Shown: positions 316-64,000 of the stretch, in pieces
Position numbering within the stretch: the stretch's first letter is position 1
How the letters are laid out: every line of letters begins with the position of its first letter
From: Hyaloraphidium curvatum SAG 235-1
Taxonomy: Eukaryota; Fungi; Monoblepharomycota
Length of the DNA stretch: 64,000 nt
Reading direction: 5' to 3'
Assembly (NCBI GenBank): GCA_025558095.1
Contig: JAIVFI010000003.1
Span: 1,090,632-1,154,631, forward strand
Made by a program: the position numbers and the translations under genes
The notes under the pieces: model-generated
What the model was told of the DNA's origin: nothing
Databases searched by the model: none
What the model saw: the letters and a program-made list of their open reading frames with translations, nothing else

Positions 316-2304
316 ATGCCGGCGCGATCGCGGCTGCAAACCGCACGGAATGGACGGACAAAGCGATGTCGTGGCGGCGGGGCGGGATTCGCGCGGGCAT
401 CGCTCTTGGCGGTCCTCGCGGCCTGCCTGCCGCACTTCCGCGCGGCATCGGCGCAGGCTGCCTCGCCGTGGGCCCCGCTGCTCTCCGCCTCGCTTTATTA
501 CTACGAGGCGCAGCGTGCGGGCAGGCTGCCGCCCGGAAATCGGGTCCCGTGGCGCGGGGACTCGGCACTGACGGACGGGCAGGACATCGGCGTGGACCTC
601 TCGGGGGGTTACTTTGACGCCGGGGACCACATGAAGTTTTCTTTCCCGCTGGGCAACGTGATTACCTCGCTGGCGTGGGGCGGCGTCGAGTTTGCGGACG
701 GGTTCGAGCGGGCAGGGGAGACGACCAACCTGAGGGCGGCGGTCAAGTGGGGCACGGACTGGCTCGCCGCCGCGCACTTCGAACCGCGCAAGCTGGCCGT
801 GCAGGTCGGCAACATGTCCGTGGACCACTCCCGGTGGACCTCGCACGAGGACCTGCCGCTCCCCCGGCCGACGCTCGTCATCGACGACCGGCGGCCGGGC
901 ACCGACGCCGCCGCGCAGGCCGCCGCCGCCCTCGCCGCCGCCTCGATGCTCTTCCTCCCCGACTCGCGCGGCGAGATCCCACCGGGATGGGGCCCGCGGT
1001 ACCCGAAATACCGGACGAGGCTGCTCCGCCACGCGCGCGAGCTGTTCGACTTCGCGCTCACCGCCCCGCGCGCGCGGTACCAGGATTCGGTCCCCGCCGC
1101 GGGCGAGGCGTACGCGTCGTCGGGGTACGACGACGAGCTGCTCTACGCCGCGCTGTGGCTGGCCCGGGCGACGGGGAGGAATGACTACGCGGAAGTGGCG
1201 GGGGAGATGTACGACCGGCTGGCGGTGGCAGGGATGGCCGAGGGCGGCGGGGAGGCGCCGGTGCACGATTGGAACAGCAAGTGGGGCGGGTGCATCGTGC
1301 TGGCCGCCTTGGTGCTCCCCGGCCTGCAGTACCCGCGCGCCGCGGCCAGGTACTTGGACCGCCTCATGCCGGGGCGCCACCCGTTCACCCCGGGGGGCAT
1401 GTGGTGGAGCGACGCCATGAGCAACTGGCAGTCCTTGGGAGGGGCGGGCAACCACGCGTTCCTCGCCGCCGTCTTTGCCCGCGGGGTGGTGGACCCGGGG
1501 CGGACGGGGAACGGGACGGCGAGCCCGGCGCGGAGGCGGGCCTACACCGATTTCGCGCGCAGCCAGGCGCGGTACATGTTCGGAGAGAACCCGCGCAACG
1601 CGACCTACATGGTCGGCGTCGCCGGAAACTCCCCGAAGCGGATCCACCACGCCACCGCCGCCGGGCCCGACCAGTACTCCCCCGGCCCGAATTTGCACAC
1701 CCTCACGGGGGCGATCGTCAACGGCCCCGGCAAATCTGACGAGTGGGCGGACGACAGGGCGGACTATGTCAGGAACGAGGCGGCACTGAACACAGCGGGC
1801 ATGTGGACGGGGGTGCTGGCGTTCCTCTGCGCCGAGGGGGGAGCGGGGCCGGCATTCAGCAACTCGACCTTGCGGGGCGGGGGGAACGTGCTGGGAACTT
1901 ACGACTGGGGGCAGAAGGACGAGCAGGATCCGTTTGGCGACGACGGGACGCCGTCCTCTGCTCCCGAGGCGACCTCCTCACCGACCCCATCCCCCCAACC
2001 TCCGGCCGGCACCTCCTCAGTCCTTTCGGCCCCCCCGCCGGCCTCCTTCTCCGCCGGCGCGATCGCCGGCATCGTGCTCGGCACCCTCCTCGGCCTGGCC
2101 CTCCTGCTCGTTTGCTGCTACGCCTGCTATTCCCGGTACCGCCGCCGCCGGGAGTGGCGCCGGCTGGGGGAGGAGAACGTGGACGGGTACGACTGGTCGA
2201 TGTTTGCCGCCAAGGGGGGGATGGACAAGGAGCTGCCGAGGACGAGCGAGGAGACGCTGGTGCCGAGCTCGGCAGGGTCCCTGGGGCGCAGCGAGGCCGG
2301 ATGA
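316..2304 (+). CDS. Glycoside hydrolase family 9 endoglucanase, secreted, with C-terminal transmembrane anchor
   Basis: GH9 motifs YYYEAQRAG, GGYFDAGDHMKF (catalytic Asp), SSGYDDELLYAALWL and DDRADYVRNEAALN (catalytic Glu). Hydrophobic signal-like N-terminus, S/T/P linker, TM helix GAIAGIVLGTLLGLALLLV followed by an Arg cluster. First in-frame ATG at 316. Confidence 0.92.
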   Translation: MPARSRLQTARNGRTKRCRGGGAGFARASLLAVLAACLPHFRAASAQAASPWAPLLSASLYYYEAQRAGRLPPGNRVPWRGDSALTDGQDIGVDLSGGYFDAGDHMKFSFPLGNVITSLAWGGVEFADGFERAGETTNLRAAVKWGTDWLAAAHFEPRKLAVQVGNMSVDHSRWTSHEDLPLPRPTLVIDDRRPGTDAAAQAAAALAAASMLFLPDSRGEIPPGWGPRYPKYRTRLLRHARELFDFALTAPRARYQDSVPAAGEAYASSGYDDELLYAALWLARATGRNDYAEVAGEMYDRLAVAGMAEGGGEAPVHDWNSKWGGCIVLAALVLPGLQYPRAAARYLDRLMPGRHPFTPGGMWWSDAMSNWQSLGGAGNHAFLAAVFARGVVDPGRTGNGTASPARRRAYTDFARSQARYMFGENPRNATYMVGVAGNSPKRIHHATAAGPDQYSPGPNLHTLTGAIVNGPGKSDEWADDRADYVRNEAALNTAGMWTGVLAFLCAEGGAGPAFSNSTLRGGGNVLGTYDWGQKDEQDPFGDDGTPSSAPEATSSPTPSPQPPAGTSSVLSAPPPASFSAGAIAGIVLGTLLGLALLLVCCYACYSRYRRRREWRRLGEENVDGYDWSMFAAKGGMDKELPRTSEETLVPSSAGSLGRSEAG

Positions 2305-8754: not shown

Positions 8755-10875
8755 ATGCGGGCCTTTTGGGCCCTCCGAACGCCTCTCATCGGCTCACCGG
8801 CATCTCATCTGCGCGGGCTTTCCGCCCGATGGGCTGCAGCGGAGCCGCGGTCGCCGTTCTGGCCCGGAATCGCGTCGGGGACCTGCGAACGCGGCGCGTC
8901 GCCTCTCTTGCGGTATTCCTCCCCCGCGACGCTCCTGCCGACGCGGTGCTTTTCGTCGGACGTTTTGCGAGGCGAGGATCCCCTAGGGCGGCTGCGGAAG
9001 GTCCTGCAGAGCGCAAGGAGCGGCCGCATCCCGCCCCGCGACGCCGCCGACAGGGTCTGGGAGGCCTATACCGCGCTCGGAAGCGCCCGCGGACTCGACA
9101 GCTACCTTGCCGCGGGTGTGGCACATCATTTGGCCGCCCATGCGGTCCAGGTGCAGGCCAGCCTCCGCGGGAAGGGCAAGGCCGGAAACCGGGACCGCGC
9201 CGAGGCATCGCTGGACCAGGCGGCGGAACGGATGGCTCGTCTTTTCACGGATGTCACCGAAGCTGGCATTGCCATTTCGCCGTTCGCCGTGACCAGATTC
9301 GTCCAGCTGAATGATCGCCACCTGGGGTGACTCGCGAGCGGCTGGGCACCTTGGAGCGAGGAGCTCTGACGTTCCGTGACCGCAGGTCGTACGCGGAATG
9401 CCGGAATGTGGTCGACTTTCTGCGGTTGAGATGCCGCGTCACGCTGACCCAGCGCACGTTGAGCGCGTCGCTGCGCAACGTTGCGCACCGCGGCAACTAC
9501 ACCGCGTTCCTCCGGCTCCTGTACGAGGAGCTGACGGCCAGCCCCGGCATCTCCATCGACGCGTTCATAATCAACCTTTTTCTCAAGGCTGTCGTCGAGG
9601 CGTCGCCATTGACTTAAGAAGACCTGGCAGGGTATCCACGCCGACAGACCTGTGTGGCGGACCTCGCAATCCCGCTGTGGGCTCTGACCAAGGACCAGCC
9701 CATCGTCCGGACTAGGAGCCTTGATCCTCGCGATCTGTATGCTTCGGAGCTGGCTCCAGACCCGGCTTCGTCTCTTCGGGAAGCAATCATGAGCGACCCG
9801 ATCCACGACACCGGTGCGGAAAATCGTGCAGCTTCTGTCGCTCGCGGCCGCTGGCTTTCGGCAGGGTCGGGAGGACGTGCTGAACGACCGCGTCGTCACG
9901 GTGGCTGTCGAAGCCTTCTGCGCTTGGAAGCATCCCAGGTGCGTCCTGGCCACCTCGGAACTGTTGGCAACGCCGCCGTTTCCGATTGCACCCCGTCCCG
10001 CGACATTCAACGTCTTGCTTGCCGATGCGTGCGATCGCCGGGACGCTGTTTCGGGCGAGGCGATCCTCGAGTGCATTCGGCAGGTGGGCTTGAAGCCGGA
10101 TCTGGAGTTGTTCAATACCATGATCCTTTTCTACGGGCGCACGGGGAGGCTCAAGCTTGCAAAGGAGACCCTGAAGGAGATGGTCACCGCAGGCTATAAG
10201 CCCAGCCCGCTGACCGGGATGGCGGTGCTGGAGGGCATCCTCGGGCCGAAGGCGGAGGACGTGGAGCGCGCAATGGACGTGCTCCTATCGGTGGGTATCG
10301 AGGTGTACGTGCAGCACTGGACGAAAGCTCTGCGCTGTTTTGCACAGCAACAGGATTTGTCGGGACTCATGCGGGTTTACGGGGCGATGACGGTGCCGCC
10401 GGATCGCGTAACAGTGTCGTTGATGGCAAAAGCGCTCGCCGATCTTGGGGGTGCGAGACAGATGACCGACTTCCTGAAGAGCGTTCCGCCGCATTTGATT
10501 GGGACATCGGAAACGTGGAGCGCCGCCATCACATCATTTACCAGGGAGTGGGCGTCTTCCGGGGACTTCGTTTTTCGGGACACCGCCTTCGCCCTGTCAT
10601 GTGCGGTGCTGGACCACACACAACTCACCACGGAATCCCTGCCGGCAGCGTTCCGCGAGCTACCTTTCGTGGACATGCACCCGCCCGTCCCCGCACCGGG
10701 GCTCATCCTGGTCATTTTTGTGCTTGCCACGCGGCTTCGCGGGGAGCAGCTGGGAATCATCACGGACAAGGGGAGGGCGTACCTGCGACGGAATGGACAC
10801 GCGGTGCCGGACGATGCGGAAGCACGAACGATGCTCGCGAGGCTTCAGCGGTTAGCAGGGATGCGCGCGGGATGA
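8755..10875 (+). pseudogene. PPR family copy A (pseudogene)
   Basis: Colinear with copies D and E, same intron (9327-9385). Premature TAA at 9615-9617 where paralogs have Ser, and a 44-nt frameshifting deletion at about 9800 relative to copy D. Confidence 0.88.
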
Positions 10876-22992: not shown

Positions 22993-24225
22993 CTATCTCC
23001 GGCGCTGGCGGGGTCTCGAGCCTGGCAAGGATAGCTTAACGGTTGCCAGCATCGCTCGCGCATCGGCGCCGTCCGGCACGCGGTGCCCGTTCCGAACAAG
23101 GTAGCCCCTCCCCTTCTCCGTGATGATCTGCCCTCGCTCGCCTCGCAATCTTGTGGCAAGGTCGAAAATGACCAGCATGAGACCGGCCTCCGGGATGGGT
23201 GGACGCAGCCCCACGAAAGGGAACTCCTCGCGCAAAGCAGCTGGCAGGGCCTCCGCCTTGACAGGTACCTGATCCAGCACAGCGCACGAGAGCCCGAAAG
23301 CAGCGTCCCGAGAATCGAGGTCCCCATCGGAACCCCAACCCCACTGCCTTGAAAAAGCCGAGATAACCGCGCTCCAAGTCGACGACTGCCCCAGGAGGTC
23401 CTGCGGAATGTCCTTCAGAAACTCCAGTAGCTGGCTGGCGTTCCCGAAATCGGCGTAGGCCTTCACCATGAGGGTCACTGCGATGTCGTCCGGCGGTACG
23501 GACATCGCTTTCCAGACCCGAACCAGGCCCGCAAAGTCCCCATGTTGACGGAAGTGACGGAGCGCAGTCGTCCAATGAGCAACGTCCACTACGACACCTG
23601 AAGATGCAAGCACCGCCATTGTCTCCTCCAACTTTTCCACGGTTGTCTGCGTTGACAAAATCTCCCCCAGGAGCAGCAATGTGGTCACCCTATCGGGCTT
23701 AAAACCGGCGGCGTCCATCTCCTGCAACGTCTCCTTAACACGATCAAGCCTTCCCGCCATTCCGTGGAACCCAATCATGCTGGTGAACAAAAATTTGTCC
23801 GGTTTCACACACCATAGTCGCATCTTCTCCAGAACAGCGTCTCCTGCCTCCGGGTCCTGGCTGCGGCACGCATCCGCAAGGAGCGGGGTAAAACTCTGTG
23901 CAACGGGCTCCAGAGCAAATGGTTCCGAAGTGAAGAGCTCTAGCGAGGCGCGGGCGCATCGGCGGTGCTTCCAGGCAGCGAACGCTTCGATGGCCGCCGC
24001 GACTACATGGCTGTCGAGCACGTCCTGCCGACCGCGACAAAAGCCCGCGGCGGTGTACGATAGAAGTTGCACGATCTTCCGTGCCGGCGACAGCGAACCG
24101 ACCGGCATCCCCGGCCGGCACAGGTCCAGAATGCTCGGCGCCACCCCGTCCATGACTGCGTGGCGGAGAGCCGACGTCGGGTTTGGCGCCGCTTCCAGAG
24201 AATCCAGATCACGGGGATCAAGAGC
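22993..24225 (-). pseudogene. PPR family copy B (3' half only, divergent)
   Basis: Homology to the other copies starts abruptly at LDPRDLDSLE and covers all PPR motifs and the C-terminus. Exon 1 and the start of exon 2 are missing. Confidence 0.85.
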
Positions 24226-25915: not shown

Positions 25916-26895
25916 ATGAGAGCGCGTTTAGCTCTACAAGGCGTGGCTTGGCGGAACTGCTCGCCCGCTGTTCGGACGGACAGGCGGGACGAGCGCTCCC
26001 AGTCCACGCAGGACATCGTTGCGCCTGTCCTGCCGACGCGATTCTTCGCTTCGAATGTGCCGCGAGGCGAAGATTCCAGGGGCCGGCTCCTGAAGGTCCT
26101 GGAGAGCGCGACGGACGGCCGAATCGCGCCCCGGGACGTTGCAGATCGGGTCTGGGAGGCCTACTCCGCGCTCGGATCTGTCCAGGGACTCGACGAACGG
26201 GCTGTTTGGAGCATCGTGGACCACGTGACTGCCCGTGCGGTCAAGGAACAGGCAAGGCTACGGCACAAAGGAAACCAGTCGCCGCCCGGGCACCGTAAAG
26301 CCACAGACGTCCTGCTCGACACGGCATCGGAACGGGTGGAACGCGTTCTAGCCTATGCTACCGATGCCGGTGTTCTCATTTTCAGTGCTCCTGCCACCCG
26401 GTACATTCAAGTGAAGGATCACCGCCTGGGGTGGGTTGCGAAGGCGGTTCCATTCAGCTGCTTCAGCTCACGCGGAGTGTCACCAGCTCTTACGCAGAGT
26501 GTCGGAAGGTGGCCGATTTCCTGCGGGCGAAGTGCCGCATGACTCTGAATGAGAAGAACCTGTGCGCGTTGGTGCGCAGCCTGGCACAGCGTTTCTTGCG
26601 GCTACTACACGAGGAACTGATCGCGAACCCCACGCTCGTGGTGAGCGCCCTCATCTGGAACCTCTGTCTGAAGGTCATCGCGGAGGCGACGCCGTTGTCT
26701 TCGGAGGATCTCGCAGGGTATCCCTGCCGACAGAGCTGCGTCGGCGACCTCGCAGTGCCGCTTTGGGCCTTGAACAAGGAAGAGAAGCTCATCTCTCGCA
26801 CCGCACGTGTGGACTCGCGCGACCTGCATGCTTTGGAATTGGACCCGCTAACCGCTGCCGATCGCAAATCCAACGAGATCGACGGCGGCCCGTGA
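25916..26895 (+). pseudogene. PPR family copy C (5' half only, divergent)
   Basis: Presequence-like exon 1 (PTRFFAS, DRVWEAYSALG, KDHRLG) and intron 26431-26486. Exon 2 homology is lost after DSRDLHALELDP (about 26850), next to the 3' end of the non-LTR element. Confidence 0.85.
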
Positions 26896-27047
26896 TGATG
26901 TGCCAGTCCATCAATTCGAAGCTGCAGTCTGCTTGGAATAAGGTAACTCAAATCCATGTGCAATCAAACGGTCACGTCGTGGTGCACGCGCGCCCAGAGA
27001 GTGTGTAATGAGGAGCTAGCAATCCCACCGTACACTTAGAAATCCCC

Positions 27048-30000
27048 CTACGCCCCAAGAATCAGCTCCTCATCGACATTCAAACCAAAAGCGACCGGCG
27101 CGGGGGCCGGAGCGTTGACAGCGGCGGCTTCGGTGCACAGCTGAAGCCAGTGTTGGAGTTGGGCCGCGACGCCAAGAGCCCAGGCCACCGCGATCCGTTC
27201 GCGGAAGCGCCGCACAAAACGAGAGTAAAGGCCATCGAGGTCCACGGGCTGCCCATCGCGGCCGACGATCCCGGGATACTGGATGCGCCCCATCTCCGAG
27301 GAGAAGCGCGAGAAAGTGTCAGAGACAGCGCTGTACGAATCAAAAGCAATCACGATCAGAGGGTAGAAGTTGGCGTTGAAGACGAAATGGGAGTAGTCCT
27401 TCCTGGCGGCCTCGACCCGCCGTTCGACTGCGTGGCCCGGGACCGAGAAGACCAGGCCCGTGTGCAAATGGGCCATAGAGGTGAGGGTCTTGATCTCGAG
27501 CAACCACCGTTTCCGGGTTTCGCGGTGCGTGATGAGAACGTCTCCAAGGCGGCCAGCATCCGCAGGCGTGGGCGGGGTGACAGTCTCGTAGCCATGTGCA
27601 AGGAGGTTTGGCGGCATGGGGTGCACGCGGAGGAGCGGGATGGAGCGAAGCGCCGCGCGGATGGCCGCGCAAATGTCGTCGTGACCAGGTCTGAAGAGAT
27701 CCCGGCCATAGCAGCCCGAGAACGCGTGCTCCCCCGTCAGCGACATGGCCGATCGCTTGCATCCCCGCCGGCAGGGCAAGGAAAGACCAGGGTAGTCGGC
27801 CTCGTGCAGGAGCGGGAGGCAAAGCCGGAAGCGTACAAGTAAGCGGAAAAAGTAGTTGCGAATGTGGTTGGCAAGCAGCGCGGGAGAGGCAGTCAGGAAA
27901 GCCGACAGGCCGTCCTGCGCCTGGACGAGCCGCTTGCGGCGCTCCAGACCAGCGGAAGTGTCGGGTTGCAAGGCAATCAGAGCCGCGAGGCGGCGCTGGT
28001 CCTCGAGACGCGTAAGGTCGCTCTGCAGGCCGTGCCAGACCGGCTGAGCGAAGAAACTGGCGTCCGCAGGGAGCGTACGGCGGACGGGCGCGGCGCCCAC
28101 CGGTTGCCCAGCACGCGCAGCCTCGGCGTACGCTGCGGCCGTGTCATCCTCGACACGCTCAAAGGCAGGGCGGAGGGCCTCGATGATGGGAACCAGTTCC
28201 CGCACGTGCTCCACGCCCACACCCCGGGCCGAGGTTCGAAGACCAAGCATGGCGTCCAAGGGGCCCGCCGTGAGGTTGAATGAAGACAGGTAAGCCGCCG
28301 AGGCCACCTTCTCCGATGACAGAAGCCCCATCCCCGAGTAGTGCAGACCCAAGAATACCTGCTCCCGCACAGTCCGACCCTCCACCGACAGCGGATCCAG
28401 ATCCTCGGCCCGATCTCCCAGCAAGCGCAAGAAGGTGGTGAAAAGCGCGTTGTCAAGACGTCGAGCAAAGGGTTGGGTAACCGAGGGGGGGAGAATGCGG
28501 AGCCAAAACGAGAAGAGCTGGGTCACACAGAGACGGAGGAGGGAGTACAGGCCCTGGAGGGAGGGGATGTCGGCCGGCATGGCGTAGCCGAGCGCAGCGC
28601 GCTCGATTTCATCGAGAAGAGCGGCAATGGAGTCGATCTTGGCCGCGAGGAACGACTCCACATAGGCAGGGGTGCCGACCGGGGCACCGACCACCTTGAG
28701 GCCGCACGAGCGAGCGAAGTCAGGCGAGCCCGGGGCCGACGCCGTGGCATGCACCTCGGGGTCGGCCTCGTGAGGCGGGAAGCCAGCGACGCGGATGTTG
28801 TGGGCCGCACCGGCCGCGCGCACCCGCTCCAGCACGGCCGGGTCCGTCGAGAGCGAAAGCAGGTAGCTCTTGTCCGGGCGGTGGGTCATGCCGAGGGAAG
28901 CAAGGCCGTCACGCACCTCTCCCAGGACGGCCATGACCGAGTTGAGCGGCCCGACCACGGTGAGGTCGTCGAGGTACCCAAGGATGAGGCAGTCGGGGTG
29001 CCCAGAGCGGATGGGCCGCAGCATGCGGCTCATGGCGCAGGAGAAGATGGCAGACGACAGCGGGTCGCCCTGGATGTTGCCCTCGTACATGGTGATCCGG
29101 AAAAGGAGCTCCGCCGAGCGCCGGTCGCGGAAGTAGGCGTGGGAAGGGCGCGAGTAAACGAGGTTGTAGTACGGGATAAGCTGAGGCACCTGGCGGACCA
29201 CCTCGCGCGCGAAGAGGCGGCGCAGCGTATTGAAGGCGTTCCTAGAGTCGACCTTCATGACGACGTGGTCGGGGAAGGCCGCCAGCCACGCATTCACCGC
29301 GTGGGCGGTCGCCTCCGCGCCCCCGTCCACCCCGTGACCCAGGTCCTCCTGCTGTTGGAGCTTCCTCAGAAGAGCCTTGTGCCGCACGGCCAGGTACGAG
29401 CCCGCGAGCCGCGTGATGCCCTCCATAATGCCAATCGGCCGGAGCCCCCCCTCCGGCTTGAGCAGAGGGACGAGGATTTGATCCGTGAGGAGCGGCCGGA
29501 GCATGGGGGTGTCGAGTCGGCCAGTGCACACGCCGTGCACCATGGCCGCCAGCGGGCGGAGCTTCCGCCGCGTCGCGTCGTTCTCGCAGTTGTGCACGAT
29601 GAAAAGTTTGGCCATGCTGAAACCCGACATGCCGGCCCCCACGCCGTCCTTCTTCCGGCGCAACCTGGCCCAGATGTCCTCCAGGAAAGCCGCGTCCGTG
29701 TAGGCAGGGCAGGGCGCGGGCGCGTTGGGGGGCAGAGACAGCCGACACAGCGGCTCTCCCTCCCGCGGCCCCGGGTACAGCTCCTCCAGTTCCGCCTGCA
29801 GCGTGGGCGTGAAGCCAGCCGGCACGGCCTCCCCCGAGAGGGCCGCGGACGCAGCACCAGGAGCGCCCTTCAAGGCGGCAAGCACGATGGCCTTGAAGAG
29901 CTGGTAGTTGAGCGGCCGCAGCCCGTCCCGCCGCGCGCCCCGGTTGACCTGACGGGCGGCGAAGTAGTTCTGCTCGTACATGTAGTCCCCCGACATGACG

Positions 30001-30959
30001 TAGCCGCCAAAAGCAAGGTAGGCGGTGAGAGTGCGGTGCAGGTCAGTTTCCGGTGCCGCCGGGTCCTCGTAGGCCCGTTGGAAAGACTCGCTGGCCCGGA
30101 AGGCGAGCGTGCTCCAGGTGGTGGTCCGGTAGCGGTGCTTCAGCGGCTCCGGCGGCGGCGCCCCCGCGCCCCCGCCCGGCGGCGGATCAGGCCCGGGACC
30201 CCCGGGTGGACCACCGTCGCCCGGGTCGCCCGGATCACCGCCGTTGCCGTGCCCGCCAGCCGCGGCGTTGCCGCCCGGCGCGCCGTCGCCGCCTGGGGGA
30301 TCACCGCCGTCCGGGGCGGCACGCGCCGCCGCCGCCGCCGCCGCCAGCGCCGCCCGTTGCGCCTGGCCGTCCTGCGGGGCGTCGGCCGCAACCCGGGCGG
30401 CCGCAAGGGCCGCCAGCAGCGCGGGCGCGGGTGGCGAAGCACGGGGAGATGCCGACGATGCCGCCGGTGACGCCGGTCCCTCCGCGCGTCCCGTAGCAGC
30501 CGCCCGCGCGGCACGCACGCGGTCGAGGAACTCGACGAGATCGGGTGGAAGCGAAGCTAAAGAGACGCCGAGTGGCGGGTTAGCTGCGTCCGGGTTGCAC
30601 GAGGTGTGCTGTCCAGAAACACCGGCACCAGAGGCGTTTGCGGCGTAGGGACGCCGGCAACCCCCGCACCGCGCTAGCCCCATGGCGCGCAACGCATCGG
30701 CAGACAGGCGCTGCATCGCCAACCAGTGCTCCGGGCTCCGTGTGACCCGAAGATGACCGTCCCGTTTGTTTTTGTTTGGAGTTGGCTGGAAGCGGCAACC
30801 ATCAACCGGGCACGCATGGAGGCCGGGTTCAGCAGGCGCCTCCGCCATCGGCACATCGCCGTCGATGCAAGATTGGTGATGATGAGATAGAGCTCCGATG
30901 TTGGCGAAAGCTGCCGCGCAGCCGTGGCAGCTGTAAGGCAGGAGCGGCGTGCGGCTCAT
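27048..30959 (-). mobile_element. Non-LTR retrotransposon ORF (zinc fingers, RT, CCHC, restriction-like endonuclease), CRE/Cnl1/MoTeR-like
   Basis: Intronless 1303-aa ORF. N-terminal C2H2-like fingers; RT motifs LLKPEGGLRPIGI, KVDSRNAFN, QGDPLS, YLDD and GLKVVGAPVG; CRRGC..HAFSGC knuckle; RPGHD, RLGDVLI and LEIKT (PD-D/ExK type). Confidence 0.92.
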
Positions 30960-33012: not shown

Positions 33013-35173
33013 ATGCACGTTCGCCGGCGACTATTCTGCCTCTTTCGCGATGCCGCGGTCTTTCCAGGGCAAGTGCCTCGTGCGCCCGGGCCCGGGTCTC
33101 ATTCCTGGTTGCCGTGTGCACGCGCCGCCGGGTCACGGACGGAGGAACGCGCCTGCGGCGGCCGCGTGCCGCCTCTTCCGGGTGTTGCCTCTCTCGTACC
33201 GAAACGGTGCTTTTCTTCCAATATGCCGCATGGGAGCGACCCGAAGGAACGGCTGCTGAACGTCCTCGAGAGCGCATCGAGCGGCCGGATCGCGCCTAGG
33301 CAGGCTGCGGACAGGGTCTGGGAGGCCTATACCGCGCTCGGAACCGCCCGCGGACTCGAGAGCTACCTCGTTGCGGGCGTGGCACATCATTTGGCCGCCC
33401 ATGCGGTCCAGGTGCAGGCCAGCCTCCGCGGGAAGGGCAGGGCCGGAAACCGGGACCACGCCGATGCCTCGCTGGACCAGGCGGCGGAACGGATGGTTCG
33501 GCTTCTCGCGGACGCCACCGAAGCAGGCATTGCCATCTCGTCGTCTGCCGTGACGAGATTCGTCCAGCTTAAGGATCGCCACCTGGGGTAGGTCGCGGAA
33601 GGGCAGGCTACTCTCGGGCTTTCTGAAGATCCTTGTGCCCAGGTCGTACGCGGAGTGCCGGAAGGTCGTCGACTTTCTGCGGTTGAAGTGCCGTGTCACG
33701 CTGAACCATCTCATGTTAAGCGCGTTGCTGCGCAACGTCGCCCACCGCGGCAACTACACCGCGTTCCTCCGGCTCCTGTACGAGGAGCTGACGGCCAGCC
33801 CCGGCATCTCCATCGACGGGTTCATAATCAATCTTTTTCTCAAGGCGGTCGTCGAGGCGTCACCCCTGACGTCGGAGGATTTGGCAGAGTATGCGCGCCG
33901 ACAGACCTGCGTGGCGGACCTCGCAATCCCGCTGTGGGCTCTGACGAAGAACGAGCCCTTCGCTCGGACTAGAAGCCTTGATCCTCGCGATCTGGATGCT
34001 TTGGAGCTGGCTCCAGACCCTGCTTCGGCTCTTCGGGAAGCAATCGTGAGCGGCCCGGCGCCCAGCATCCTCGACCTCTGCCGCCCGACGATACCGGCTG
34101 GATCCACGACACCGGTGCGGAAGATTGTGCAGCTTCTGTCGCTCGCGGCCGCTGGCTTTCGGCAGGGTCGGGAGGACGTGCTGGACGGCCACGTCGTCGT
34201 GGCGGCTGTCGAAGCCTTCTGCGCTTGGAAGCACCCCAGGTGCGCACTGGCCACCTCGGAATTCTTCACAATGGCGCCATTTCCTATTGCGCCCCGTCCC
34301 CAGACGTTCAACATCTTGCTTGCCGATGCCTGCGATCGCCGGGACGCCGTTTCGGGCGACGCGATCCTCGAGCGCATTCGGCAGGTGGGCTTGAAGCCGG
34401 ATCTGGAGTTGTTCAATACCATGATCCTTTTCTACGGGCGCACGGGGAGGCTCAAGCTTGCAAAGGAGACCCTGAAGGAGATGGTCACCGCAGGCTATAA
34501 GCCCAGCCCGCTGACCGGGATGGCGGTGCTGGAGGGCATTCTCGGGCCAAAGGCGACGGTCGAGGACGTGGAGCGCGCAATGGACGCGCTCACATCGGTG
34601 GGTATCGACGTGGATGCGCCCAACTGGAACAAGGCTCTCCGGCACTTCGCGCAGCAGCGGGATCTGCAAGGGCTCATGCGGGTTTACGGGTTGATGACGG
34701 TGCAGCCAAGTCCCGTAACGGTGTCCTTGGTGGCAAAGGCGCTCGCGGATCTTGGGGATACGGGCCAGATGATCGACTTCCTGATCAGCGTTCCACCGCA
34801 TCTGGTCGGAAGATCCGCAACTTGGAGCGCCGCCATAACAGCCTTCGCAAGGCGGTGGACATCTTCCGGGGACTCGATTTGTCGGGACGCTGCCTTTGCT
34901 CTCTCGTGTGCCGCGGTGGACCACACACCACCGAGCAAGGAATCACTGCCGGCATCAGTCCGCGAGCTACCTTTCGTTGGCATGCGCCCGCCCGTCCCAG
35001 AATTCGGCCTCATGCTGGTCATTTTTGAGCTTGCCACGCGGCTTCGTGGGGAGCAGCTGCGAATCATCACAGACAAGGGGAGGGCGTACCTGCAACGGAA
35101 TGGGCATGCGCTGCCGGACGGTGCGGATGCACGGACAATGCTCGCGAGGCTTAGGCGGTCTCTATTGCGCTGA
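33013..35173 (+). CDS. PPR family copy D (intact, about 701 aa, putative mitochondrial PPR protein)
   Basis: Arg-rich N-terminus ending KRCFSS. Intron 33588-33642. Tandem PPR motifs at 34298-34711, e.g. PQTFNILLADACDRRDAVSGDAILERIRQVGLKPD and LELFNTMILFYGRTGRLKLAKETLKEMVTAGYKPS. Confidence 0.88.
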
Positions 35174-35489
35174 GCTCCGACGGCGGACGGCCCCGTTCGT
35201 GGCCGCAAAAAGCGCCTTGATATCTACGTCTCCACCGTTGGAAACGGCCTCGAAGACACGAATATATCAATTATTAGCACGTCGATCCGGGTCGCCTGCC
35301 CTCCTTTACGCCTTTGCATTTGTCCTTGTGTATCAGTACCCAGGATGGGTCTTCACGCCCCCGGGGAGGGTTGATAAGCGCCGGAAAGGGCGTTCCTGGC
35401 TCGGTCCATGCGACTTTCGAGAGCGGCATTTCTCGCCCGCGGGAGCTTTCCCCCGCGTCCTTGAACAGTTTGGTCGTCAGCGCGAGGGC

Positions 35490-35935
35490 AAAGCAGGCCA
35501 GGGCGGCTTGACAGGCGCCTGTCGACACGCTCATTCTCGCAGGATAGAGAGGCATGGAAAGGTGCTGTTCCTCGCGAGGAAGCTTACAGGCACTTTCCAG
35601 GACGAGGCCGGACAGAATGCACGCTGCATCCGGAAAGAAGAAGCAGCGTGGACTCATGCTGTTCTTCGAAACGAAGGTGGAGCGCTCGAGCGCTTGGGCG
35701 AAGCTGGCCAGGGCGGCTTGACAGGGCCGGAATGCAAGCTCCATTCGGAATGAAAAGGAAGCGTGGAATCATGCTGTTCCGCGCGACGAAGCTTCCCGGC
35801 GTCTGTCAAGGGCGTGCGTCCCCGGCGGAGCGTTCTAGAGCTCGGGCGAAGCTACCCAGGGCGGCTTGACAGGCGCCGGAATGCAAGCTCCATTCCGAAT
35901 GAAAAAGAAGCGGGGCAACATGATGTTCCGCGCAG
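35490..35935. repeat. Degenerate tandem repeat (3-4 units of about 100-200 bp)
   Basis: CAGGGCGGCTTGACAGG recurs at about 35499, 35709 and 35857. GAATGCA(A/C)GCT recurs at about 35615, 35730 and 35879. Confidence 0.7.
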
Positions 35936-37341: not shown

Positions 37342-39551
37342 TCAGTAACGACCGACCCCGCCCGCCTTTTTCCCCACCCTTGGTCCACTCCTCCTTCCCG
37401 CCTCGGCCTGGAGTATTGCATGCATCGCCCTCGCGTCCGCGCCACCCCAAACCGCGTATCCGTTCCGAACCAGATAGGCCCGCCCTTTGTCCGTCAGCAT
37501 CTGCAGCTGCTCCCCCTGTAGCCGCGTGGCCAGATCGAATATCACCAGCGTGAGCCCCGCTTCAGGGACGGGCGGGCGCATGTCCACGAAAGGTAGCTCG
37601 CGGAGGGCTGTCGGCAGGGATTCCTTGGTGAGTTGTGCGTGGTCCAGCGCCGCACATGACAGGGCGAAGGCGGCGTCCCGAAAAACAAAGTCCCCGGACG
37701 ACGCCCACTCCCTGGCGAATGATGCGATGGCAGTGCTCCAGGTTGCGGATATCCCGATCAAATGCGGCGGAACGCTCTTCAGGAAGTCGATCATCTGGCT
37801 CGTGCCCCCAAGATCGGCGAGCGCCTTTGCCATCAACGACACGGTCACCTCGTTTGGTGGCACGGTCATCGACCCGTAAACCCGCATGAGCCCTTGCAGA
37901 TCCTGTTGCTGTGCAAAACAGCGCAGCGCTTTCGTCCAGTGGTGCACGTCCACGTCGATGCCTACCGAGGCAAGCACCTTCATGGCGTGCCCCACGTCCT
38001 CGACCGTCGCGTTCGGCCCGAGGATGCCCTCCAGCACCGCCATCCCGGTCACCGCGTTGGGCTTGTAGCCTGCGGCGACCATCTCCTTCAGGGTCTCCTT
38101 TCCCAGCTCGAGCCCCCCCGTGCGCCCGTAGAAAAGGATCATGGTAGTGAACAACTCCAGATTCGGCTTCACGCCCAGCTGCCGCATGCGCTTGAGGATC
38201 GCCTCGCCCGAAACAGCGTCCCGGCGATCGCAGGCGTCGGTAAGCAAGACGTTGAATGTGTCGGGACGGGGCGGAATCGGAAACGGCGCGGTTGAGAAGA
38301 GTTCCGAGGTGGCCAGGGCGCACCTGGGGTGCTTCCAAGCGCAGAAGGCTTCGACAGCCCCAGTGACGACGTGGCCGTCCAGCACGTCCTCCCGACCCTG
38401 CCGAAAGCCAGCGGCAGCGAGCGACAGAAGCTGCACAATCTTCCGCACCGGTGTCGTGGATCCAGCTGGCATCGCCGGGCGGCAGAGTTCGCGAATGTCC
38501 GGCGCCGGGCCACTCATGATTGCTTCCCGAAGAGCCGAAGCCGGGTCTGGAGCCGATTCCGAAGCATCCAGATCGCGAGGATCAAGGATCGCAGTCCGGA
38601 CGACGCGCTGGTCCTTCGTCACAGCCCAGAGCGGGATCGCGAGGTCGGCCACGCTGCCCTGTCGGCGCGGATACTCCGCCAGATCCTCCGACGTCAGGGG
38701 CGAAGCTTTAGCGACGGCAGCCAGATAGAGGTTGAGGATGTACGAGTGCACAACTAGGTCGGGATTGGCCGTCAGCTCTTCGTGGAGGAGCTTGAGGAAA
38801 GCCGTGTAGTTGCCGCGGTGCGCCACGTTGCGCAGCAACGCGCTCAACAGGTGCTTGTTCAGCGCGACGCGGCACCTCAACCGCAGAAAGTCGACCACCT
38901 TCCGGCATTCCGCGTACGACCTGCGGACACGGAACGTCAGAGGTCCTCGCTCCGAGGTGCGCGGGCGCTCGCGACTCACCCCAGGTGGCGATCCTTCAGC
39001 TGGACGAATCTGGTCACGGCGGGCGGCGAAATGTCGATGCCAGCTTCGGTAGCATCCGCGAAAAGCTGAACCATCCGCTCCGCCGCCTGGTCCAGCGAGG
39101 CCCAGGCGCGTTCCCGGTGCCCTGTCCTGCCCTTGCCCCGCAACCCGGCCTGCTGCTCAACCGCATGGGATGCCAAATGATGTGCCACACCCGCAACGAG
39201 GTAGCTGTCGAGTCCGCGGGCGGTTCCGAGCGCGGTATAGGCCTCCCAGACCCTGTCCGCGGCCTGGTGCGGAGGGATCCGCCCGTTCTTCGCGATCTGC
39301 AGGACCTCTCTCAACCGTCCTAGGGGATCGCTCCCTCGAGAAACACCGGAAGAGAAGCACCGCGTCGAGAGGAGGGCCGGGGACGAGGCCAGGGGCGGCA
39401 CGCGAGGGCGGACGCGTTCCGCCTTCCGTGACCAGGCGGCGCGTGCAGACGGCGCCCAGGCAGGAAGTCCGGGCTCGGTCGCCAGAGCCACATGCCCTCG
39501 AACCGTCAAGGGATAGTTCAAGAGGCGGAATAGACGCCGGTGGCCTTGCAT
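37342..39551 (-). CDS. PPR family copy E (intact, about 716 aa)
   Basis: MQGHRRLFRLL...TRCFSS presequence, intron 38921-38979, complete PPR array. The extreme C-terminus differs from the other copies. Confidence 0.88.
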
Positions 39552-49225: not shown

Positions 49226-50913
49226 ATGCACGTCCGCCGGCGACTATTCTGCCTCTTTCGCGATGCCCCGGTATTTCCGGGCCACGTGGCTCGTGCGCCC
49301 GGGCCCGGATTTCCTGCCTGGGCGCCGTCTGCACGCGCCGTCGGGTCACGGACGGCAGAACGTGTCGCCCGGTGCCTACTGCCGGCTCTGCCCCGGAATG
49401 CCCCCTCTCGGGCCCCCTCGCCTACGCGATGCTTTTCTTCCGGTGTTCCTCGAGTGGAAGATCCCCTAGGACGGCTCCGGAAGGTTCTGCAGAGCGCAGG
49501 GAGCGGCCGGATCCCGCCCCGTCGCGCCGCCGACAGGGTCTGGGAGGCCTATTCCGCGCTCGGATCCGCCCGGGGACTGGACAGCTACACGATTGGAGGC
49601 GTGGCACGTCATTTGGCGGCCCATGCCGTGGAGCTTCAGGCCGGGTTGCGGGGCAACGCGGGGTCAGGACACCGGGACCGCGCCTGGGCCTCGCTGGACC
49701 AGGCTTCGGAGCGGATGGCCCGGCTCTTCGTGGATGCCACCGAAGCTGGCATTGCCATTACGCCGTCCGCCGTGACGAGATTCGTCCAGCTGAAGGATCG
49801 CCACCTGGGGTGAGTAGAGAGAGGCGGGGCACCTTGGAGCCAGGAGCTCTGACGTTCTGTGTCGGCAGGCCGTACGCGGAATGCCGGAGGGTGGTCGACG
49901 TTCTGCATTTGAGGTTCCGCGTCACGCCGAACCAGCGCACGTTGAGCGCGTTGCTGCGCAACGTTGCGCACCGCGGCAATTACACCGCGTTCCTCCGGCT
50001 CCTCTATGAGGAGCTGACCGGGAATCCCGATCTAGTTGTGCACTCGTACATCCTCAACCTCTATCTGGCTGCCGTCGCTAAAGCTTCGCCCCTGACGTCG
50101 GAGGATCTGGCGGAGTATCCGCGCCGACAGGGCAGCGTGGCCGACCTCGCGATCCCGCTGTGGGCTCTGACGAAGGACCAACCCGTGGTCCGGACTGCGA
50201 GCCTGTATTCTCGCGATCTGGATGCTTCAGAACTGTCTCCAGACCCGGCTTCGGCTCTTCGGGAAGCAATCGTGAGCGGCCCGGCGCCCAACATCCTCGA
50301 CCTCTGCCGCCCCGCTATGCCTTCTGGATCCACGACACCGGTGCGGAAGATCGTGCAGCTTCTGTCGCTCGCTGCCGCTGGCTTTCGGCAGGGTCGGGAG
50401 GACGTTTTGGACGGCCGTAGTGTCACCGAGGCTGTCGTAGCCTTCTGCGCTTGGAAGCACCCCAGGTGCGCCCTGGCCACCTCGGAACTCTTTGCTACCG
50501 CGCCGTTTTCGATCCCGCCCCTTCCCGCGACATTCAACGTCTTGCTTGCTGATGCCTGCGATCGTAGGGACGCCGTTTCGGGCGAGGCGATCCTCGAGCG
50601 CATGCGGCAACGGGGCGTTAAGCCTCATCTGGAGATGTTCAATACCATTATCCTCTTCTACGGGACCACGGAATCCCTGCCGACAGCCCTCCGCGAGCTA
50701 CCTTTCGTGGGCATGCGCCCGCCCGTCCCCGAACCGGGTCTCACGCTGGTCATTTTCGACCTCGCCACGCGGCTTCGCGGGGAGCAGCTGCGGATCATCT
50801 CGGACAAGGGCAGGGGCTACCTCATCAGGAGCGGGTACCGCGTTCCTGACTGCGCCAACGCCCGGGAGATGCTGGCGATGCTCCTGCGGTCTGCAGCACG
50901 CACGCGGGGTTAG
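49226..50913 (+). pseudogene. PPR family copy F (open frame, but about 165 codons of the PPR array deleted)
   Basis: Intron 49810-49868. ...IILFYG joins directly to TTESLP at about 50664, whereas copy G has about 165 aa between these points. Confidence 0.85.
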
Positions 50914-61488: not shown

Positions 61489-62724
61489 CTAACCCTGCGT
61501 GCGTGCTGCAGACCGCAGGAGCATCGCCAGCATCTCCCGGGCGTTGGCGCCGTCAGGAACGCGGTACCCGCTCCTGATGAGGTAGCCCCTGCCCTTGTCC
61601 GAGATGATCCGCAGCTGCTCCCCGCGAAGCCGCGTGGCGAGGTCGAAAATGACCAGCGTGAGCCCCGGTTCGGGGACGGGCGGGCGCAAGTCCACGAAAG
61701 GTAGCTCGCGGAGGGCTGTCGGCAGGGATTCCGTGGTCAGCTGTGCGTGGTCCAGCGCCGCACATGACAGGGCGAAGGCGGTGTCCCGGAAAACAAAGTC
61801 CCCGGAAGACGCCCACTCCCTAGCGAATGATGCGATGGCGGTGCTCCACGTTGGCGATGTCCCAATCAAATGCGGCGGAACGCTCTTCAGGAAGTCGATC
61901 ATCTGGCTCGTGCCCCAAAGATTGGCGACCGCCTTGGCCACCAGTGCCACGGTCACCTCGTTTGGAGGCACGGTCATAACACGATAAAGGCGCATGAGCC
62001 CTTGCAGATCCCGCTGCTTCGCGAAATGCCGGAGGGCCTTGTCCCAGTGCTGCACGTTCACCTCGATACCTGCCGAGGCAAGCACCTTCATTGCGTGCTC
62101 CACCACCTCGACCGTCACCTTCGGCCTGAGGATGCCCTCCAGCAGCGCCATCCCAGTCACCGCGGTTGGTTTGTGGCCCGCGCCAGCCATCTCCTTCAGG
62201 GTCTCCCTCGCCAGCTCGAGCCACCCCGTGCGCCCGTAGAAAAGGATAATGATATTGAACATCTCCAGATGCGGCTTCCCCCCCCGTTGCCGCATGCGCT
62301 TGAGGATCGCCTCGCCCGAAACGGCGTCCCTACGATCGCAGGCATCAGCAAGCAAGACGTTGAATGTCGCGGGAAGGGGCGGGATCGAAAACGGCGCGGT
62401 AGCAAAGAGTTCCGAGGTGGCCAGGGCGCACCTGGGGTGCTTCCAAGCGCAGAAGGCTACGACAGCCTCGGTGACACTACGGCCGTCCAAAACGTCCTCC
62501 CGACCCTGCCGAAAGCCAGCGGCAGCGAGCAACAGAAGCTGCACGATCTTCCGCACCGGTGTCGTGGATCCAGAAGGCATAGCGGGGCGGCAGAGGTCGA
62601 GGATGTTGGGCGCCGGGCCGCTCACGATTGCTTCCCGAAGAGCCGAAGCCGGGTCTGGAGCCAGCTCCAAAGCATCCAGATCGCAAGGATCAAGCCACAG
62701 CCCGATCGCGAGGTCCGCCACGCA
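61489..62724 (-). pseudogene. PPR family copy G (5'-truncated by LTR insertion)
   Basis: Near-identical to copy F where they overlap. Starts at CVADLAI directly against the LTR edge at 62725, and has a 13-codon deletion before LDP. Confidence 0.88.
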
Positions 62725-63838: not shown

Positions 63839-64000
63839 TTAGGGTTAGGTTAGGTTAGGTTAGGTTAGGTTAGGTTAGGTTAGGTTAGGTTAGGTTAGGT
63901 TAGGTTAGGTTAGGTTAGGTTAGGTTAGGTTAGGTTAGGTTAGGTTAGGTTAGGTTAGGTTAGGTTAGGTTAGGTTAGGTTAGGTAGGTTAGGTTAGGTA
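63839..64000 (+). repeat. Telomere, (TTAGG)n of about 31 units, preceded by one TTAGGG
   Basis: Terminal pentamer array with the G-rich strand running toward the end; one TAGG variant near 63985. Confidence 0.95.

What the first reader, a model, noticed from the sequence alone, without database searches (positions are those of the whole stretch)
34298..34711. PPR specificity residues (position 5 and last) vary between otherwise similar paralogs
Seen, as 5th/last residue. Motif 1: ND (A,D), NN (E), NH (F,G), TD (B). Motif 2: NS (A,D), TN (E), NT (G), TD (B). Motif 4: NS (D), TD (A,B), TN (E), DN (G). Most scaffold residues stay constant among A, D, E and G. Known: in the plant PPR code ND=U, NS=C, NN=C/U, TN=A and TD=G, and diversifying selection at these sites marks RFL genes. 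Inference: each paralog reads a different RNA sequence, giving a diversifying repertoire of RNA binders.
Basis: partly seen in the sequence, partly recalled or inferred. Interest (0 to 1): 0.85.

Follow-up and report, generated by a model that had tools for sequence, protein, structure and literature searches.

The report
Fast-evolving PPR gene cluster in a fungus
The window is the last 64 kb of a chromosome of the chytrid-like fungus Hyaloraphidium curvatum, and it holds seven copies (two intact) of a PPR RNA-binding-repeat gene family in which the residues that read RNA bases in plants change about three times faster than the rest of the protein, much as in plant fertility-restorer genes, although selection for change is not proven.

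Summary
Window 34298-34711 encodes four consecutive PPR motifs of an intact two-exon gene (copy D).

The organism is the fungus Hyaloraphidium curvatum, not a plant. The family has about 24 loci genome-wide, mostly in clusters near chromosome ends; this cluster ends 1.1 kb from a (TTAGG)n telomere. Pfam, a profile search against solved designer PPRs (E about 1e-99), AlphaFold and Foldseek all support the PPR call, and the position-5/35 register is fixed by alignment to dPPR crystal structures.

My codon-likelihood test on two young clades gives omega 0.85 (0.6-1.2) at the 5th and last positions against 0.30-0.33 elsewhere (p about 0.002). Positions 2, last and 5 rank 1st, 2nd and 4th of 32 motif positions, which is the plant RFL pattern. 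Omega is not significantly above 1, and the sites most likely to be under positive selection lie elsewhere.

Five of the seven window copies are broken, and copy A is a D/E gene-conversion mosaic. Only 4-5 motifs are canonical.

Verdict: a new fungal variant of an RFL-like, birth-and-death PPR repertoire. Different RNA specificities among paralogs are plausible; adaptive diversification is unproven.

The parts
33013..35173 (+). Copy D, the focal gene and intact. Exon 1 is 33013-33587, a GT-AG intron is 33588-33642, and exon 2 is 33643-35173 including the stop. Part of it is the NCBI model P0001.
   Evidence: ORFs and sequence; tblastn with the full-length paralog P0002; a 100% match to the H. 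curvatum protein P0001.
34298..34402 (+). PPR motif 1 of D (35 aa), with N at position 5 and D last.
   Evidence: Alignment to dPPR-U10/U8C2; motif table; helix pair in the AF2 model of paralog E.
34403..34507 (+). PPR motif 2 of D (35 aa), N5/S35. This is the best Pfam PPR_2/PPR match.
34508..34615 (+). PPR-like motif 3 of D (36 aa), M5/D-last. The position-5 residue is non-canonical.
34616..34711 (+). PPR-like motif 4 of D (32 aa, short), N5/S-last.
34712..34813 (+). PPR-like motif 5 of D (34 aa), S5/R-last.
37342..39551 (-). Copy E, intact, equal to the NCBI model P0002 (716 aa). It is 77% identical to D in exon 2. Pairs are NN, TN, MD, TN.
8836..10875 (+). Copy A, broken. A deletion with a frameshift near 9790-9810 removes about 13 conserved residues. 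It is a D/E mosaic.
23035..24222 (-). Copy B, 5'-truncated. It holds only the equivalent of P0002 residues 303-695, preceded by unrelated Arg/Gly-rich sequence. It is 57% identical to D.
26027..26919 (+). Copy C, an N-terminal fragment only. It ends in stop codons next to the retroelement ORF.
49226..50913 (+). Copy F. An in-frame internal deletion removes the region from the second helix of motif 2 to beyond motif 5 (P0002 residues about 479-621). It is the NCBI model P0005.
61489..62721 (-). Copy G, 5'-truncated, with a stop and unrelated sequence upstream and a 13-aa internal deletion. It lies 1.1 kb from the telomere repeat.
27048..30959 (-). Retroelement ORF (1303 aa, reverse transcriptase) abutting fragment C.
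63840..64000 (+). Telomere repeat (TTAGG)n at the contig end. It places the cluster in the last 56 kb of a chromosome.

Best explanation
The finding lies in one intact member (D) of a lineage-specific nuclear gene family of Hyaloraphidium curvatum.

Architecture. The family encodes proteins of about 640-730 aa. Each has an Arg-rich, acid-poor N-terminal extension that is probably a mitochondrial presequence (inferred). The rest is a PPR-like alpha-solenoid. Its centre carries 4-5 canonical P-type PPR motifs, flanked by family-specific conserved regions.

Evolution. The family evolves by local duplication, gene conversion or unequal crossing-over, and frequent decay, in clusters that mostly lie near chromosome ends. 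The scaffold is under purifying selection (omega about 0.3). The three residues per motif that face RNA in solved PPR-RNA complexes (2, 5, last) change at about the neutral rate (omega about 0.85-1.07). At positions 5 and last they mostly stay within the residue set used by the PPR code (N/T/S at 5; D/N/S/T/H last; position 2 was not checked in this respect).

Most likely mechanism (inferred). Intact paralogs bind short, different RNA elements of the 30-kb linear mitochondrial genome's transcripts. For example, D would read U-C-x-C and E would read Y-A-x-A by the plant code. Point changes at code positions plus exchange of motif blocks between paralogs generate new specificities. Whether this turnover is adaptive or merely tolerated is open.
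For: Identity of organism and family:
- Only H. curvatum proteins hit at full length.
- There are 40 genomic matches, in clusters on C3, C17, C35, C8 and C20.

PPR membership:
- Pfam PPR_2 and PPR_3 score above their cut-offs, and 15-16 of 20 family members hit PPR models.
- The family profile hits designer PPRs at E=3e-99.
- The position 5/35 register is fixed by alignment to 5i9f and 5i9g.
- The AF2 model has pLDDT 82 and regular helix pairs.
- Foldseek's top hits are dPPR and PPR10, and the atlas shape search gives plant P-class proteins, including an RFL cluster, at TM 0.5-0.58 over 440-486 residues.

Rate contrast:
- Code positions vs the rest: 0.85 vs 0.30-0.33 (p=0.002 against all other sites; 0 of 20,000 random sets against other tract sites).
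- The same direction is seen in both clades taken separately, C3 (p=0.001) and C17 (p=0.013 against tract sites).
- By motif position, the triple 2/5/last ranks in the top 0.34% of all 4960 triples.
- The synonymous rate at these codons is ordinary (alpha=1, beta=0.85), so this is not a mutation hotspot.
- Pairwise dN at code sites is 2-4.6 times the rest in 8 of 10 pairs.

Scaffold constraint: pairwise omega is 0.34-0.5.

Code-type residues: 36 of 38 position-5 residues in motifs 1, 2 and 4 of the 13 C3/C17 genes are N, T or S.

Mosaic structure and decay.

Chromosome-end location: the telomere is at the window end. In 10 of 12 contigs that carry the family, members lie within 100 kb of a contig end.

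Presequence-like N-termini.
Against: - Omega at code positions is not significantly above 1, and approximate site-model tests are marginal. Their top sites lie mostly in the C-terminal region, not at code positions.
- Only 4-5 motifs are canonical, which is too few for a unique RNA address by themselves.
- Motifs 3 and 5 carry non-code residues (M, L, A at position 5; R, I, Y last).
- Five of the seven window copies are broken.
- The pair 5/last alone is not significant in the C17 clade (p=0.10).
- Recombination violates the single-tree assumption.
- The plant code has not been validated for fungal PPRs.
Confidence: 0.6

Rival explanations
1. Tolerated drift, not diversification. The paralogs are redundant or on their way to decay. 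Positions 2, 5 and last are simply the least constrained exposed positions, so they drift at the neutral rate, and no new specificity is being selected or used.
For: - Omega at code positions is about 1 (0.6-1.2) and cannot be told apart from neutrality.
- Five of the seven window copies are broken.
- The G-F pair has omega 0.75.
- The sites with the highest posterior for omega>1 are elsewhere.
- Position 18, which is not an RNA contact, is also fast (0.95).
Against: - The same positions are fast in the C17 clade, whose genes look intact.
- D and E are both intact and under scaffold constraint (omega 0.34), yet differ at 6 of 10 code positions.
- Residues at positions 5 and last stay within the code-competent set rather than wandering freely.
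- In PPR proteins with conserved targets these positions are normally well conserved (established knowledge).
Confidence: 0.25
2. The family is a set of protein-binding scaffolds or assembly factors, like fungal CIA84, which has a PPR-like fold but works by binding proteins. The PPR code would then be irrelevant, and the variable positions would line a protein-contact or unused surface.
For: - The feature search of residues 75-405 puts clusters named for complex I intermediate-associated protein (84) at ranks 1 and 12 (scores 0.95 and 0.92).
- CIA84 is a fungal PPR-like protein that binds ND2, NDUFC2, NDUFAF1 and tafazzin (PMC9668296).
- The best-conserved parts of the family are the non-PPR insert and the flanks.
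Against: - CIA84 has no detectable PPR sequence motifs (PMC9668296), whereas this family scores E=3e-99 against designer PPRs and keeps N/T/S at position 5 and D/N/S/T at the last position.
- No CIA84 chain appears in the PDB profile search at E<=0.01 or among the Foldseek hits listed.
- The feature score is a lead only.
Confidence: 0.1
3. Chance or artefact. The variation at the 5th and last positions is what any set of paralogs that are about 80% identical would show, or it comes from misalignment or a wrong repeat register.
For: - 36% of all columns vary among A, D, E and G.
- Only 10-15 codons carry the signal.
Against: - The a priori set of all five motifs is still enriched (Fisher p=0.006; randomisation p=0.002; motif-position permutation p=0.003) and shows the same direction in a second clade.
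- The young-clade alignments are essentially gap-free.
- The register is fixed by alignment to crystallised dPPRs.
Confidence: 0.04

Closest known systems
Restorer-of-fertility-like (RFL) P-class PPR genes of angiosperms
   Same: - Closely similar paralogs sit in genomic clusters and are more alike within the species than to anything outside it.
- Substitution rates are high at the base-recognising positions within otherwise conserved motifs.
- Recombination or gene conversion occurs between cluster members.
- The clusters are littered with truncated or deleted copies (PMC5075784).
- The proteins are predicted to be mitochondrial.
   Different: - This is a fungus, not a plant, and an independent origin. 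Outside fungi only the PPR tract matches.
- There are only 4-5 canonical motifs instead of 15-20.
- Large conserved family-specific N- and C-terminal regions and an 85-residue non-PPR insert are present.
- Omega above 1 is not demonstrated.
- No cytoplasmic male sterility or comparable conflict is known in this organism.
NCL (NCC-like) OPR-RAP paralog cluster of Chlamydomonas reinhardtii
   Same: It is a non-plant example of a recently expanded subfamily of helical-repeat organellar RNA binders, in which single changes alter the target (Boulouis et al. 2015, as summarised in PMC8635915).
   Different: The repeat type is OPR, not PPR. A RAP domain is present. The target organelle is the chloroplast. 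The lineage is an alga.
Fungal mitochondrial PPR proteins (for example yeast Aep3, Rmd9, Pet309-type gene-specific factors)
   Same: These are fungal, mitochondrial, degenerate PPR solenoids with a few recognisable motifs. Aep3 (9hm0) and Rmd9 (7a9w) appear as weak hits.
   Different: As far as I know those are single-copy genes, each with a fixed target. Here there are about 24 paralogous loci with clustered recent duplicates, and the motifs are much more canonical (plant-like).
Short PPR proteins and domains (THA8-type; the five-motif PPR domain of PRORP)
   Same: They have four to five PPR motifs embedded in, or attached to, other structure. PRORP1 chains hit weakly.
   Different: This family has no nuclease domain. 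The rest of the protein is a continuous PPR-like superhelix.
CIA84, fungal complex I assembly factor
   Same: It is fungal and mitochondrial, of similar size, with a PPR-like fold. It is the nearest named cluster by language-model features.
   Different: CIA84 lacks PPR sequence motifs and acts by protein binding (PMC9668296). No sequence or Foldseek match to it was found here.

Membership tests
PPR (pentatricopeptide repeat) proteins | Sequence match to curated PPR models above their cut-offs. | tested here: met
   - D scores 30.2 bits on PPR_2 (cut-off 30) and 28.6 on PPR_3 (cut-off 25).
- E scores 39.4 and 35.2.
- 15-16 of 20 family members hit PPR or PPR_2.
- The family profile hits dPPR-U8C2 at E=2.7e-99.
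PPR (pentatricopeptide repeat) proteins | Tandem repeats of about 35 residues, each a pair of antiparallel helices forming a superhelix. | tested here: met
   - The AF2 model (pLDDT 82) has helix pairs with periods of 35, 35, 36, 32 and 34 residues.
- Foldseek's top hits are designer PPRs and PPR10.
- The atlas shape search gives TM 0.5-0.58 to plant P-class PPRs.
PPR (pentatricopeptide repeat) proteins | Code-type residues at positions 5 and 35, in register with solved PPR-RNA complexes. | tested here: met
   - N5/D35 and N5/S35 of D align with those of dPPR-U10 and dPPR-U8C2.
- 36 of 38 position-5 residues in motifs 1, 2 and 4 are N, T or S.
- Motifs 3 and 5 are non-canonical.
PPR (pentatricopeptide repeat) proteins | Sequence-specific binding of single-stranded RNA. 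| not testable with these tools
   No binding data exist. The predicted preferences (D: U-C-x-C; E: Y-A-x-A) follow the plant code by inference only.
PPR (pentatricopeptide repeat) proteins | Organellar (mitochondrial) targeting. | tested here: inconclusive
   The first 40 residues of nine full-length or near-full-length H. curvatum models (eight of them 700 aa or more) hold 4-9 R/K and 0-1 D/E. In the one model folded (P0002), residues 1-73 are modelled as disordered. No targeting predictor or experiment was available.
RFL-type PPR genes (angiosperm restorer-of-fertility-like) | P-class proteins made almost entirely of 15-20 canonical 35-aa motifs. | tested here: not met
   Only profile positions 214-400 (4-5 motifs) match generic PPRs. 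The flanks are family-specific.
RFL-type PPR genes (angiosperm restorer-of-fertility-like) | Genomic clusters of paralogs more similar to each other than to genes of other species. | tested here: met
   - There are seven copies in 54 kb here and at least seven in 42 kb on C17.
- The nearest proteins outside the species are 25% identical.
RFL-type PPR genes (angiosperm restorer-of-fertility-like) | Diversifying selection (omega>1) at base-recognising positions. | tested here: inconclusive
   - The rate is raised about threefold (omega 0.85 vs 0.30-0.33; p=0.002), and positions 2, last and 5 rank 1st, 2nd and 4th of 32.
- The CI includes 1.
- Only 'last' in the window clade reaches 1.92 (1.07-3.45).
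- Approximate M1a/M2a tests give p=0.035 and 0.067.
RFL-type PPR genes (angiosperm restorer-of-fertility-like) | Recombination between cluster members, and many fragments or pseudogenes. | tested here: met
   - A is 97-100% identical to D over codons 225-295 and 88-92% identical to E over codons 360-430.
- A, B, C, F and G are broken.
RFL-type PPR genes (angiosperm restorer-of-fertility-like) | Descent from the angiosperm RFL clade. | tested here: not met
   Full-length relatives are found only in H. curvatum and one unidentified fungus. Similarity to plant proteins is limited to the repeat tract.
CIA84-like fungal assembly factors | Detectable sequence or fold match to solved CIA84. | tested here: not met
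   No CIA84 chain appears in the PDB profile search (E<=0.01) or among the Foldseek hits listed. Only a language-model feature score supports it.

The most novel reading that the evidence does not exclude
A fungus runs an RFL-like nuclear-mitochondrial arms race. A repertoire of short-PPR genes near chromosome ends is kept diversifying, by point changes at positions 2/5/35 and by gene conversion of motif blocks. This lets it track changing RNA targets in the small linear mitochondrial genome of Hyaloraphidium, or in selfish elements within it. That would be convergent with plant restorer genes and would show that the PPR code operates natively in fungi.
Probability: 0.25. Interest if true: 0.8.

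Novelty: new variant of a known kind. Interest (0 to 1): 0.6.

Why it matters
Clustered, recombining PPR repertoires with hypervariable base-reading residues are known from flowering plants, where they are read as the footprint of nuclear-mitochondrial conflict.

Finding the same signature in an early-diverging fungus would show that this mode of evolution is not tied to plant male sterility. The fungal family has a different architecture and lies close to telomeres.

It would also offer a compact system for testing whether the PPR code holds outside plants and what drives such repertoires. The system comprises a 32-Mb nuclear genome, a 30-kb linear mitochondrial genome (the Forget et al. 2002 reference, cited in PMC6131824), and 4-5 readable motifs per protein.

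The full-text search found no paper that links Hyaloraphidium with pentatricopeptide proteins.

Tried and rejected
- **Ancestral-state counting.** I did not reconstruct ancestors by other means. Instead I wrote a pruning-likelihood codon model that sums over ancestral states.
- **iqtree codon runs.** The run with bootstrap failed on thread limits and then timed out. I used a DNA-model topology with scaled branch lengths. PAML and HyPhy are not installed, so M7/M8, MEME and GARD were not run. My M1a/M2a comparison is a grid approximation with fixed branches.
- **Earlier findings.** The search of earlier findings returned nothing near the window.
- **Identifying the second fungus (SRR26194948).** Searching with a neighbouring GH2 gene gave only bacterial-like hits at 40-45% identity. 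Searching with P0021 found only itself.
- **CIA84 lead.** The lead from the atlas feature search was checked against the PDB profile search and the Foldseek results and was not supported.
- **Target prediction.** I did not scan the mitochondrial genome for targets, because four to five readable motifs give a 4-5-nt pattern that occurs everywhere.
- **Complex prediction.** None was run, because no protein-protein claim is made.
Full report
**What and where.** The window is G000:C3:1090632-1154631, the last 64 kb of a 1.15-Mb contig of a 31.9-Mb genome. Proteins encoded here are identical to NCBI entries of Hyaloraphidium curvatum, a chytrid-like fungus of the Monoblepharidomycetes. The window ends in a (TTAGG)n array at 63840-64000. 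The same repeat ends contigs C1-C5, C9, C30, C35 and C39, so it is the telomere.

**The focal gene.** The finding's coordinates, 34298-34711, lie in the large second exon of an intact gene, copy D. Exon 1 is 33013-33587, a 55-nt GT-AG intron is 33588-33642, and exon 2 is 33643-35173. The coordinates are exactly four consecutive repeats of 35, 35, 36 and 32 residues.

**The copies in the window.** tblastn and blastn find seven copies in 54 kb, on both strands, interspersed with unrelated genes: GH9, a CorA-like transporter, a Zn2Cys6 factor and a 2-hydroxyacid dehydrogenase.
- D and E (37342-39551, minus strand, equal to the 716-aa model P0002) are intact.
- A has a deletion with a frameshift near 9800.
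- B lacks the 5' half.
- C is an N-terminal fragment ending beside a 1303-aa reverse-transcriptase ORF.
- F has an in-frame deletion that removes most of the repeat tract.
- G is 5'-truncated and lies 1.1 kb from the telomere.

**Check of the observation.** The register is not a matter of taste. phmmer aligns D to the crystallised designer proteins dPPR-U10 (5i9f) and dPPR-U8C2 (5i9g). The N of TFN/LFN falls on N5, and the D/S of KPD/KPS falls on residue 35.

**Is it PPR?** Yes.
- Pfam PPR_2 and PPR_3 pass their cut-offs for D and E, and 15-16 of 20 members hit PPR models.
- A profile of 20 members hits designer PPRs at E=2.7e-99 and maize PPR10 at 7e-54.
- AlphaFold2 on that alignment gives pLDDT 82.4 and pTM 0.74. 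The model is a continuous alpha-solenoid from residue about 75 to 701, with regular helix pairs over the tract.
- Foldseek ranks designer PPRs and PPR10 first.
- The atlas shape search aligns 440-486 residues with plant P-class PPRs at TM 0.5-0.58, one cluster being named restorer-of-fertility-like.

**Extent of the PPR similarity.** An exhaustive profile search of 1.84 billion representatives finds full-length matches only in H. curvatum and in two proteins of one unidentified fungus. These are P0021 and P0022 from SRR26194948: 25% identity, 53% GC, and no second family gene in the 18-kb loci fetched around them. All other hits match only profile positions about 214-400, the repeat tract. The architecture is therefore 4-5 canonical motifs inside family-specific conserved flanks. 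It includes an 85-residue non-helical insert that holds many of the family's invariant residues.

**The family in the genome.** There are forty six-frame matches, about 24 distinct loci. Clusters lie on C3 (this window), C17 (at least seven genes in 42 kb), C35, C8 and C20. In 10 of 12 contigs that carry the family, members lie within 100 kb of a contig end (binomial p about 7e-4 against a 34% expectation). Telomere repeats are verified at the relevant ends of C3, C5, C30, C35 and C39. The C17 and C8 clusters sit near contig starts that have no telomere repeat, and C20 and C9 are internal.

Two young clades have unsaturated synonymous divergence (dS 0.13-0.42) and an overall omega of 0.34-0.5, or 0.75 for the degenerate pair G-F. 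They are D, A, E, G, F in this window, and L005-L008 plus L010 on C17. I therefore wrote a GY94-F3x4 pruning likelihood on a fixed topology, with kappa, omega and a branch scale fitted, and profiled omega per site and per site class.

- The ten a priori code sites (5th and last of five motifs) give omega 0.85 (support interval 0.6-1.2). All other sites give 0.33, and other tract sites give 0.30.
- Random sets of ten sites reach this value in 0.18% of draws, or 0 of 20,000 within the tract.
- The direction is the same in each clade: C3 1.2 vs 0.30 (p=0.001), and C17 0.6 vs 0.26 in the tract (p=0.013).
- On the deeper 13-gene tree the values are 0.46 vs 0.25 (p=0.026).
- Pooling by motif position, the fastest four of 32 positions are 2 (1.07), last (1.07), 18 (0.95) and 5 (0.67).
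- The triple 2/5/last ranks in the top 0.34% of all 4960 triples (0.6% in C3 and 1.1% in C17). The pair 5/last gives p=0.018 overall but 0.10 in C17.
- A class-specific synonymous rate is ordinary (alpha 1.0, beta 0.85), so this is not a mutation hotspot.
- Tree-free NG86 counts give dN at code sites of 2-4.6 times the rest in 8 of 10 pairs.
- The two intact window genes differ at 6 of 10 code sites against 23% overall (p=0.013).

**Limits.**
- Omega at code sites is compatible with 1. Only 'last' positions in the window clade nominally exceed it (1.92, 1.07-3.45, LRT 3.9).
- Approximate M1a/M2a comparisons give p=0.035 (C3), 0.067 (C17) and 0.8 (joint). The sites with the highest posterior for omega>1 are mostly in the C-terminal region.
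- The paralogs recombine. A is 97-100% identical to D at the nucleotide level across codons 225-295 (motifs 1-2), 71-83% across codons 300-440 where it is E-like (88-92% over codons 360-430), and D-like again at the 3' end. Support inside the C17 clade is 44-53%.
- Recombination undermines single-tree site tests. It affects all site classes alike, so the contrast between classes and the pairwise results stand.

**Reading.**
- Shown: this is a real PPR family that is lineage-specific and clustered (this cluster ends at a telomere). It undergoes duplication, gene conversion and decay. The scaffold is under purifying selection, and the three RNA-facing positions per motif turn over at about the neutral rate. 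Positions 5 and last keep code-type residues (36 of 38 position-5 residues in motifs 1, 2 and 4 are N, T or S).
- Inferred: the proteins are mitochondrial, because their N-termini are Arg-rich, acid-poor and disordered. They bind RNA, and intact paralogs differ in preference. By the plant code D reads U-C-x-C and E reads Y-A-x-A.
- Open: whether the turnover is selected (RFL-like conflict) or merely tolerated.
- Weaker alternative: a protein-binding role like that of fungal CIA84. CIA84 lacks PPR sequence motifs (PMC9668296) and does not match this family by sequence or fold.

**Comparison with the known.** The behaviour matches what is described for angiosperm RFL clusters in clustering, in recombination, in fragments littering the clusters and in high diversity at the base-recognising positions (PMC5075784). 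The family fails RFL membership on architecture and descent. The nearest non-plant analogue is the NCL subfamily of OPR paralogs of Chlamydomonas (PMC8635915). No paper in the library combines Hyaloraphidium with pentatricopeptide, and a search for fungal PPR expansions gave nothing relevant.

**Verdict.** This is a new variant of a known kind. Interest is moderate to high, because the pattern is unexpected in a fungus and is directly testable.

Noticed in passing
window 63840-64000; also the ends of G000 contigs C1, C2, C4, C5, C9, C30, C35 and C39: The telomere repeat has a five-base unit, (TTAGG)n, with occasional TTAGGG or TTTAGGG units. I recall TTAGG as the arthropod-type unit and TTAGGG as the usual fungal one. 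Almost all matches are on the forward strand at contig 3' ends (756 forward, 2 reverse), so contig starts are mostly not telomeric.
   Followed up: partly
G000 contigs C3, C5, C8, C10, C16, C17, C23, C30, C35 and C39 (places listed): In 10 of 12 contigs that carry the PPR family, members lie within 100 kb of a contig end (binomial p about 7e-4). The C5 fragments are 4 kb from a telomere and copy G is 1.1 kb from one. Exceptions are C20 (mid-contig) and C9 (213 kb from the end).
   Followed up: partly
window 27048-30959 (-): A 1303-aa ORF with a reverse-transcriptase domain (RVT_1, E=5e-10) is probably a retroelement. It lies directly after the truncated end of family fragment C and may have caused the truncation. 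Fragment B, the complementary 3' part, lies inverted 2 kb upstream of C.
   Followed up: partly
window 35479-35933: Three to four direct repeats of about 110 bp (75-87% identical) lie just downstream of copy D.
   Followed up: no
P0002 residues 263-347 (window about 38130-38400, minus strand; equivalent to about 33850-34110 in D): An 85-residue mostly non-helical insert interrupts the solenoid. It is modelled with high confidence and holds many of the family's invariant or near-invariant residues (E269, Y274, D283, P317, L321, R322, G344). Its function is unknown. It is the best-conserved part of the family and a candidate partner-binding site.
   Followed up: no
L031 6215-8149 and L032 5833-7761 (Logan assembly of SRR26194948): Two full-length relatives (P0021 and P0022, about 25% identity to E) occur in an unidentified fungus with 53% GC. 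In the 18-kb loci fetched, each is the only family member among unrelated genes. This suggests that the family predates the H. curvatum expansion.
   Followed up: partly
L031 13948-16923: In that second fungus, a GH2 beta-galactosidase (called as two adjacent genes) has its best matches, at 40-45% identity, to actinobacterial and other bacterial enzymes. It may have been acquired horizontally.
   Followed up: no
window 16-2304 (+): An ORF matches glycosyl hydrolase family 9 (cellulase) strongly (E=3e-115). It lies at the centromere-proximal edge of the window.
   Followed up: no
exon 2 codons about 398-503 of the family (window about 34840-35150 in D): The sites with the highest posterior for omega>1 in my approximate site model cluster in the C-terminal helical region, not in the PPR tract. 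Examples are exon-2 codons 398, 407, 461, 462, 483 and 503. This region may be a second fast-evolving surface.
   Followed up: partly
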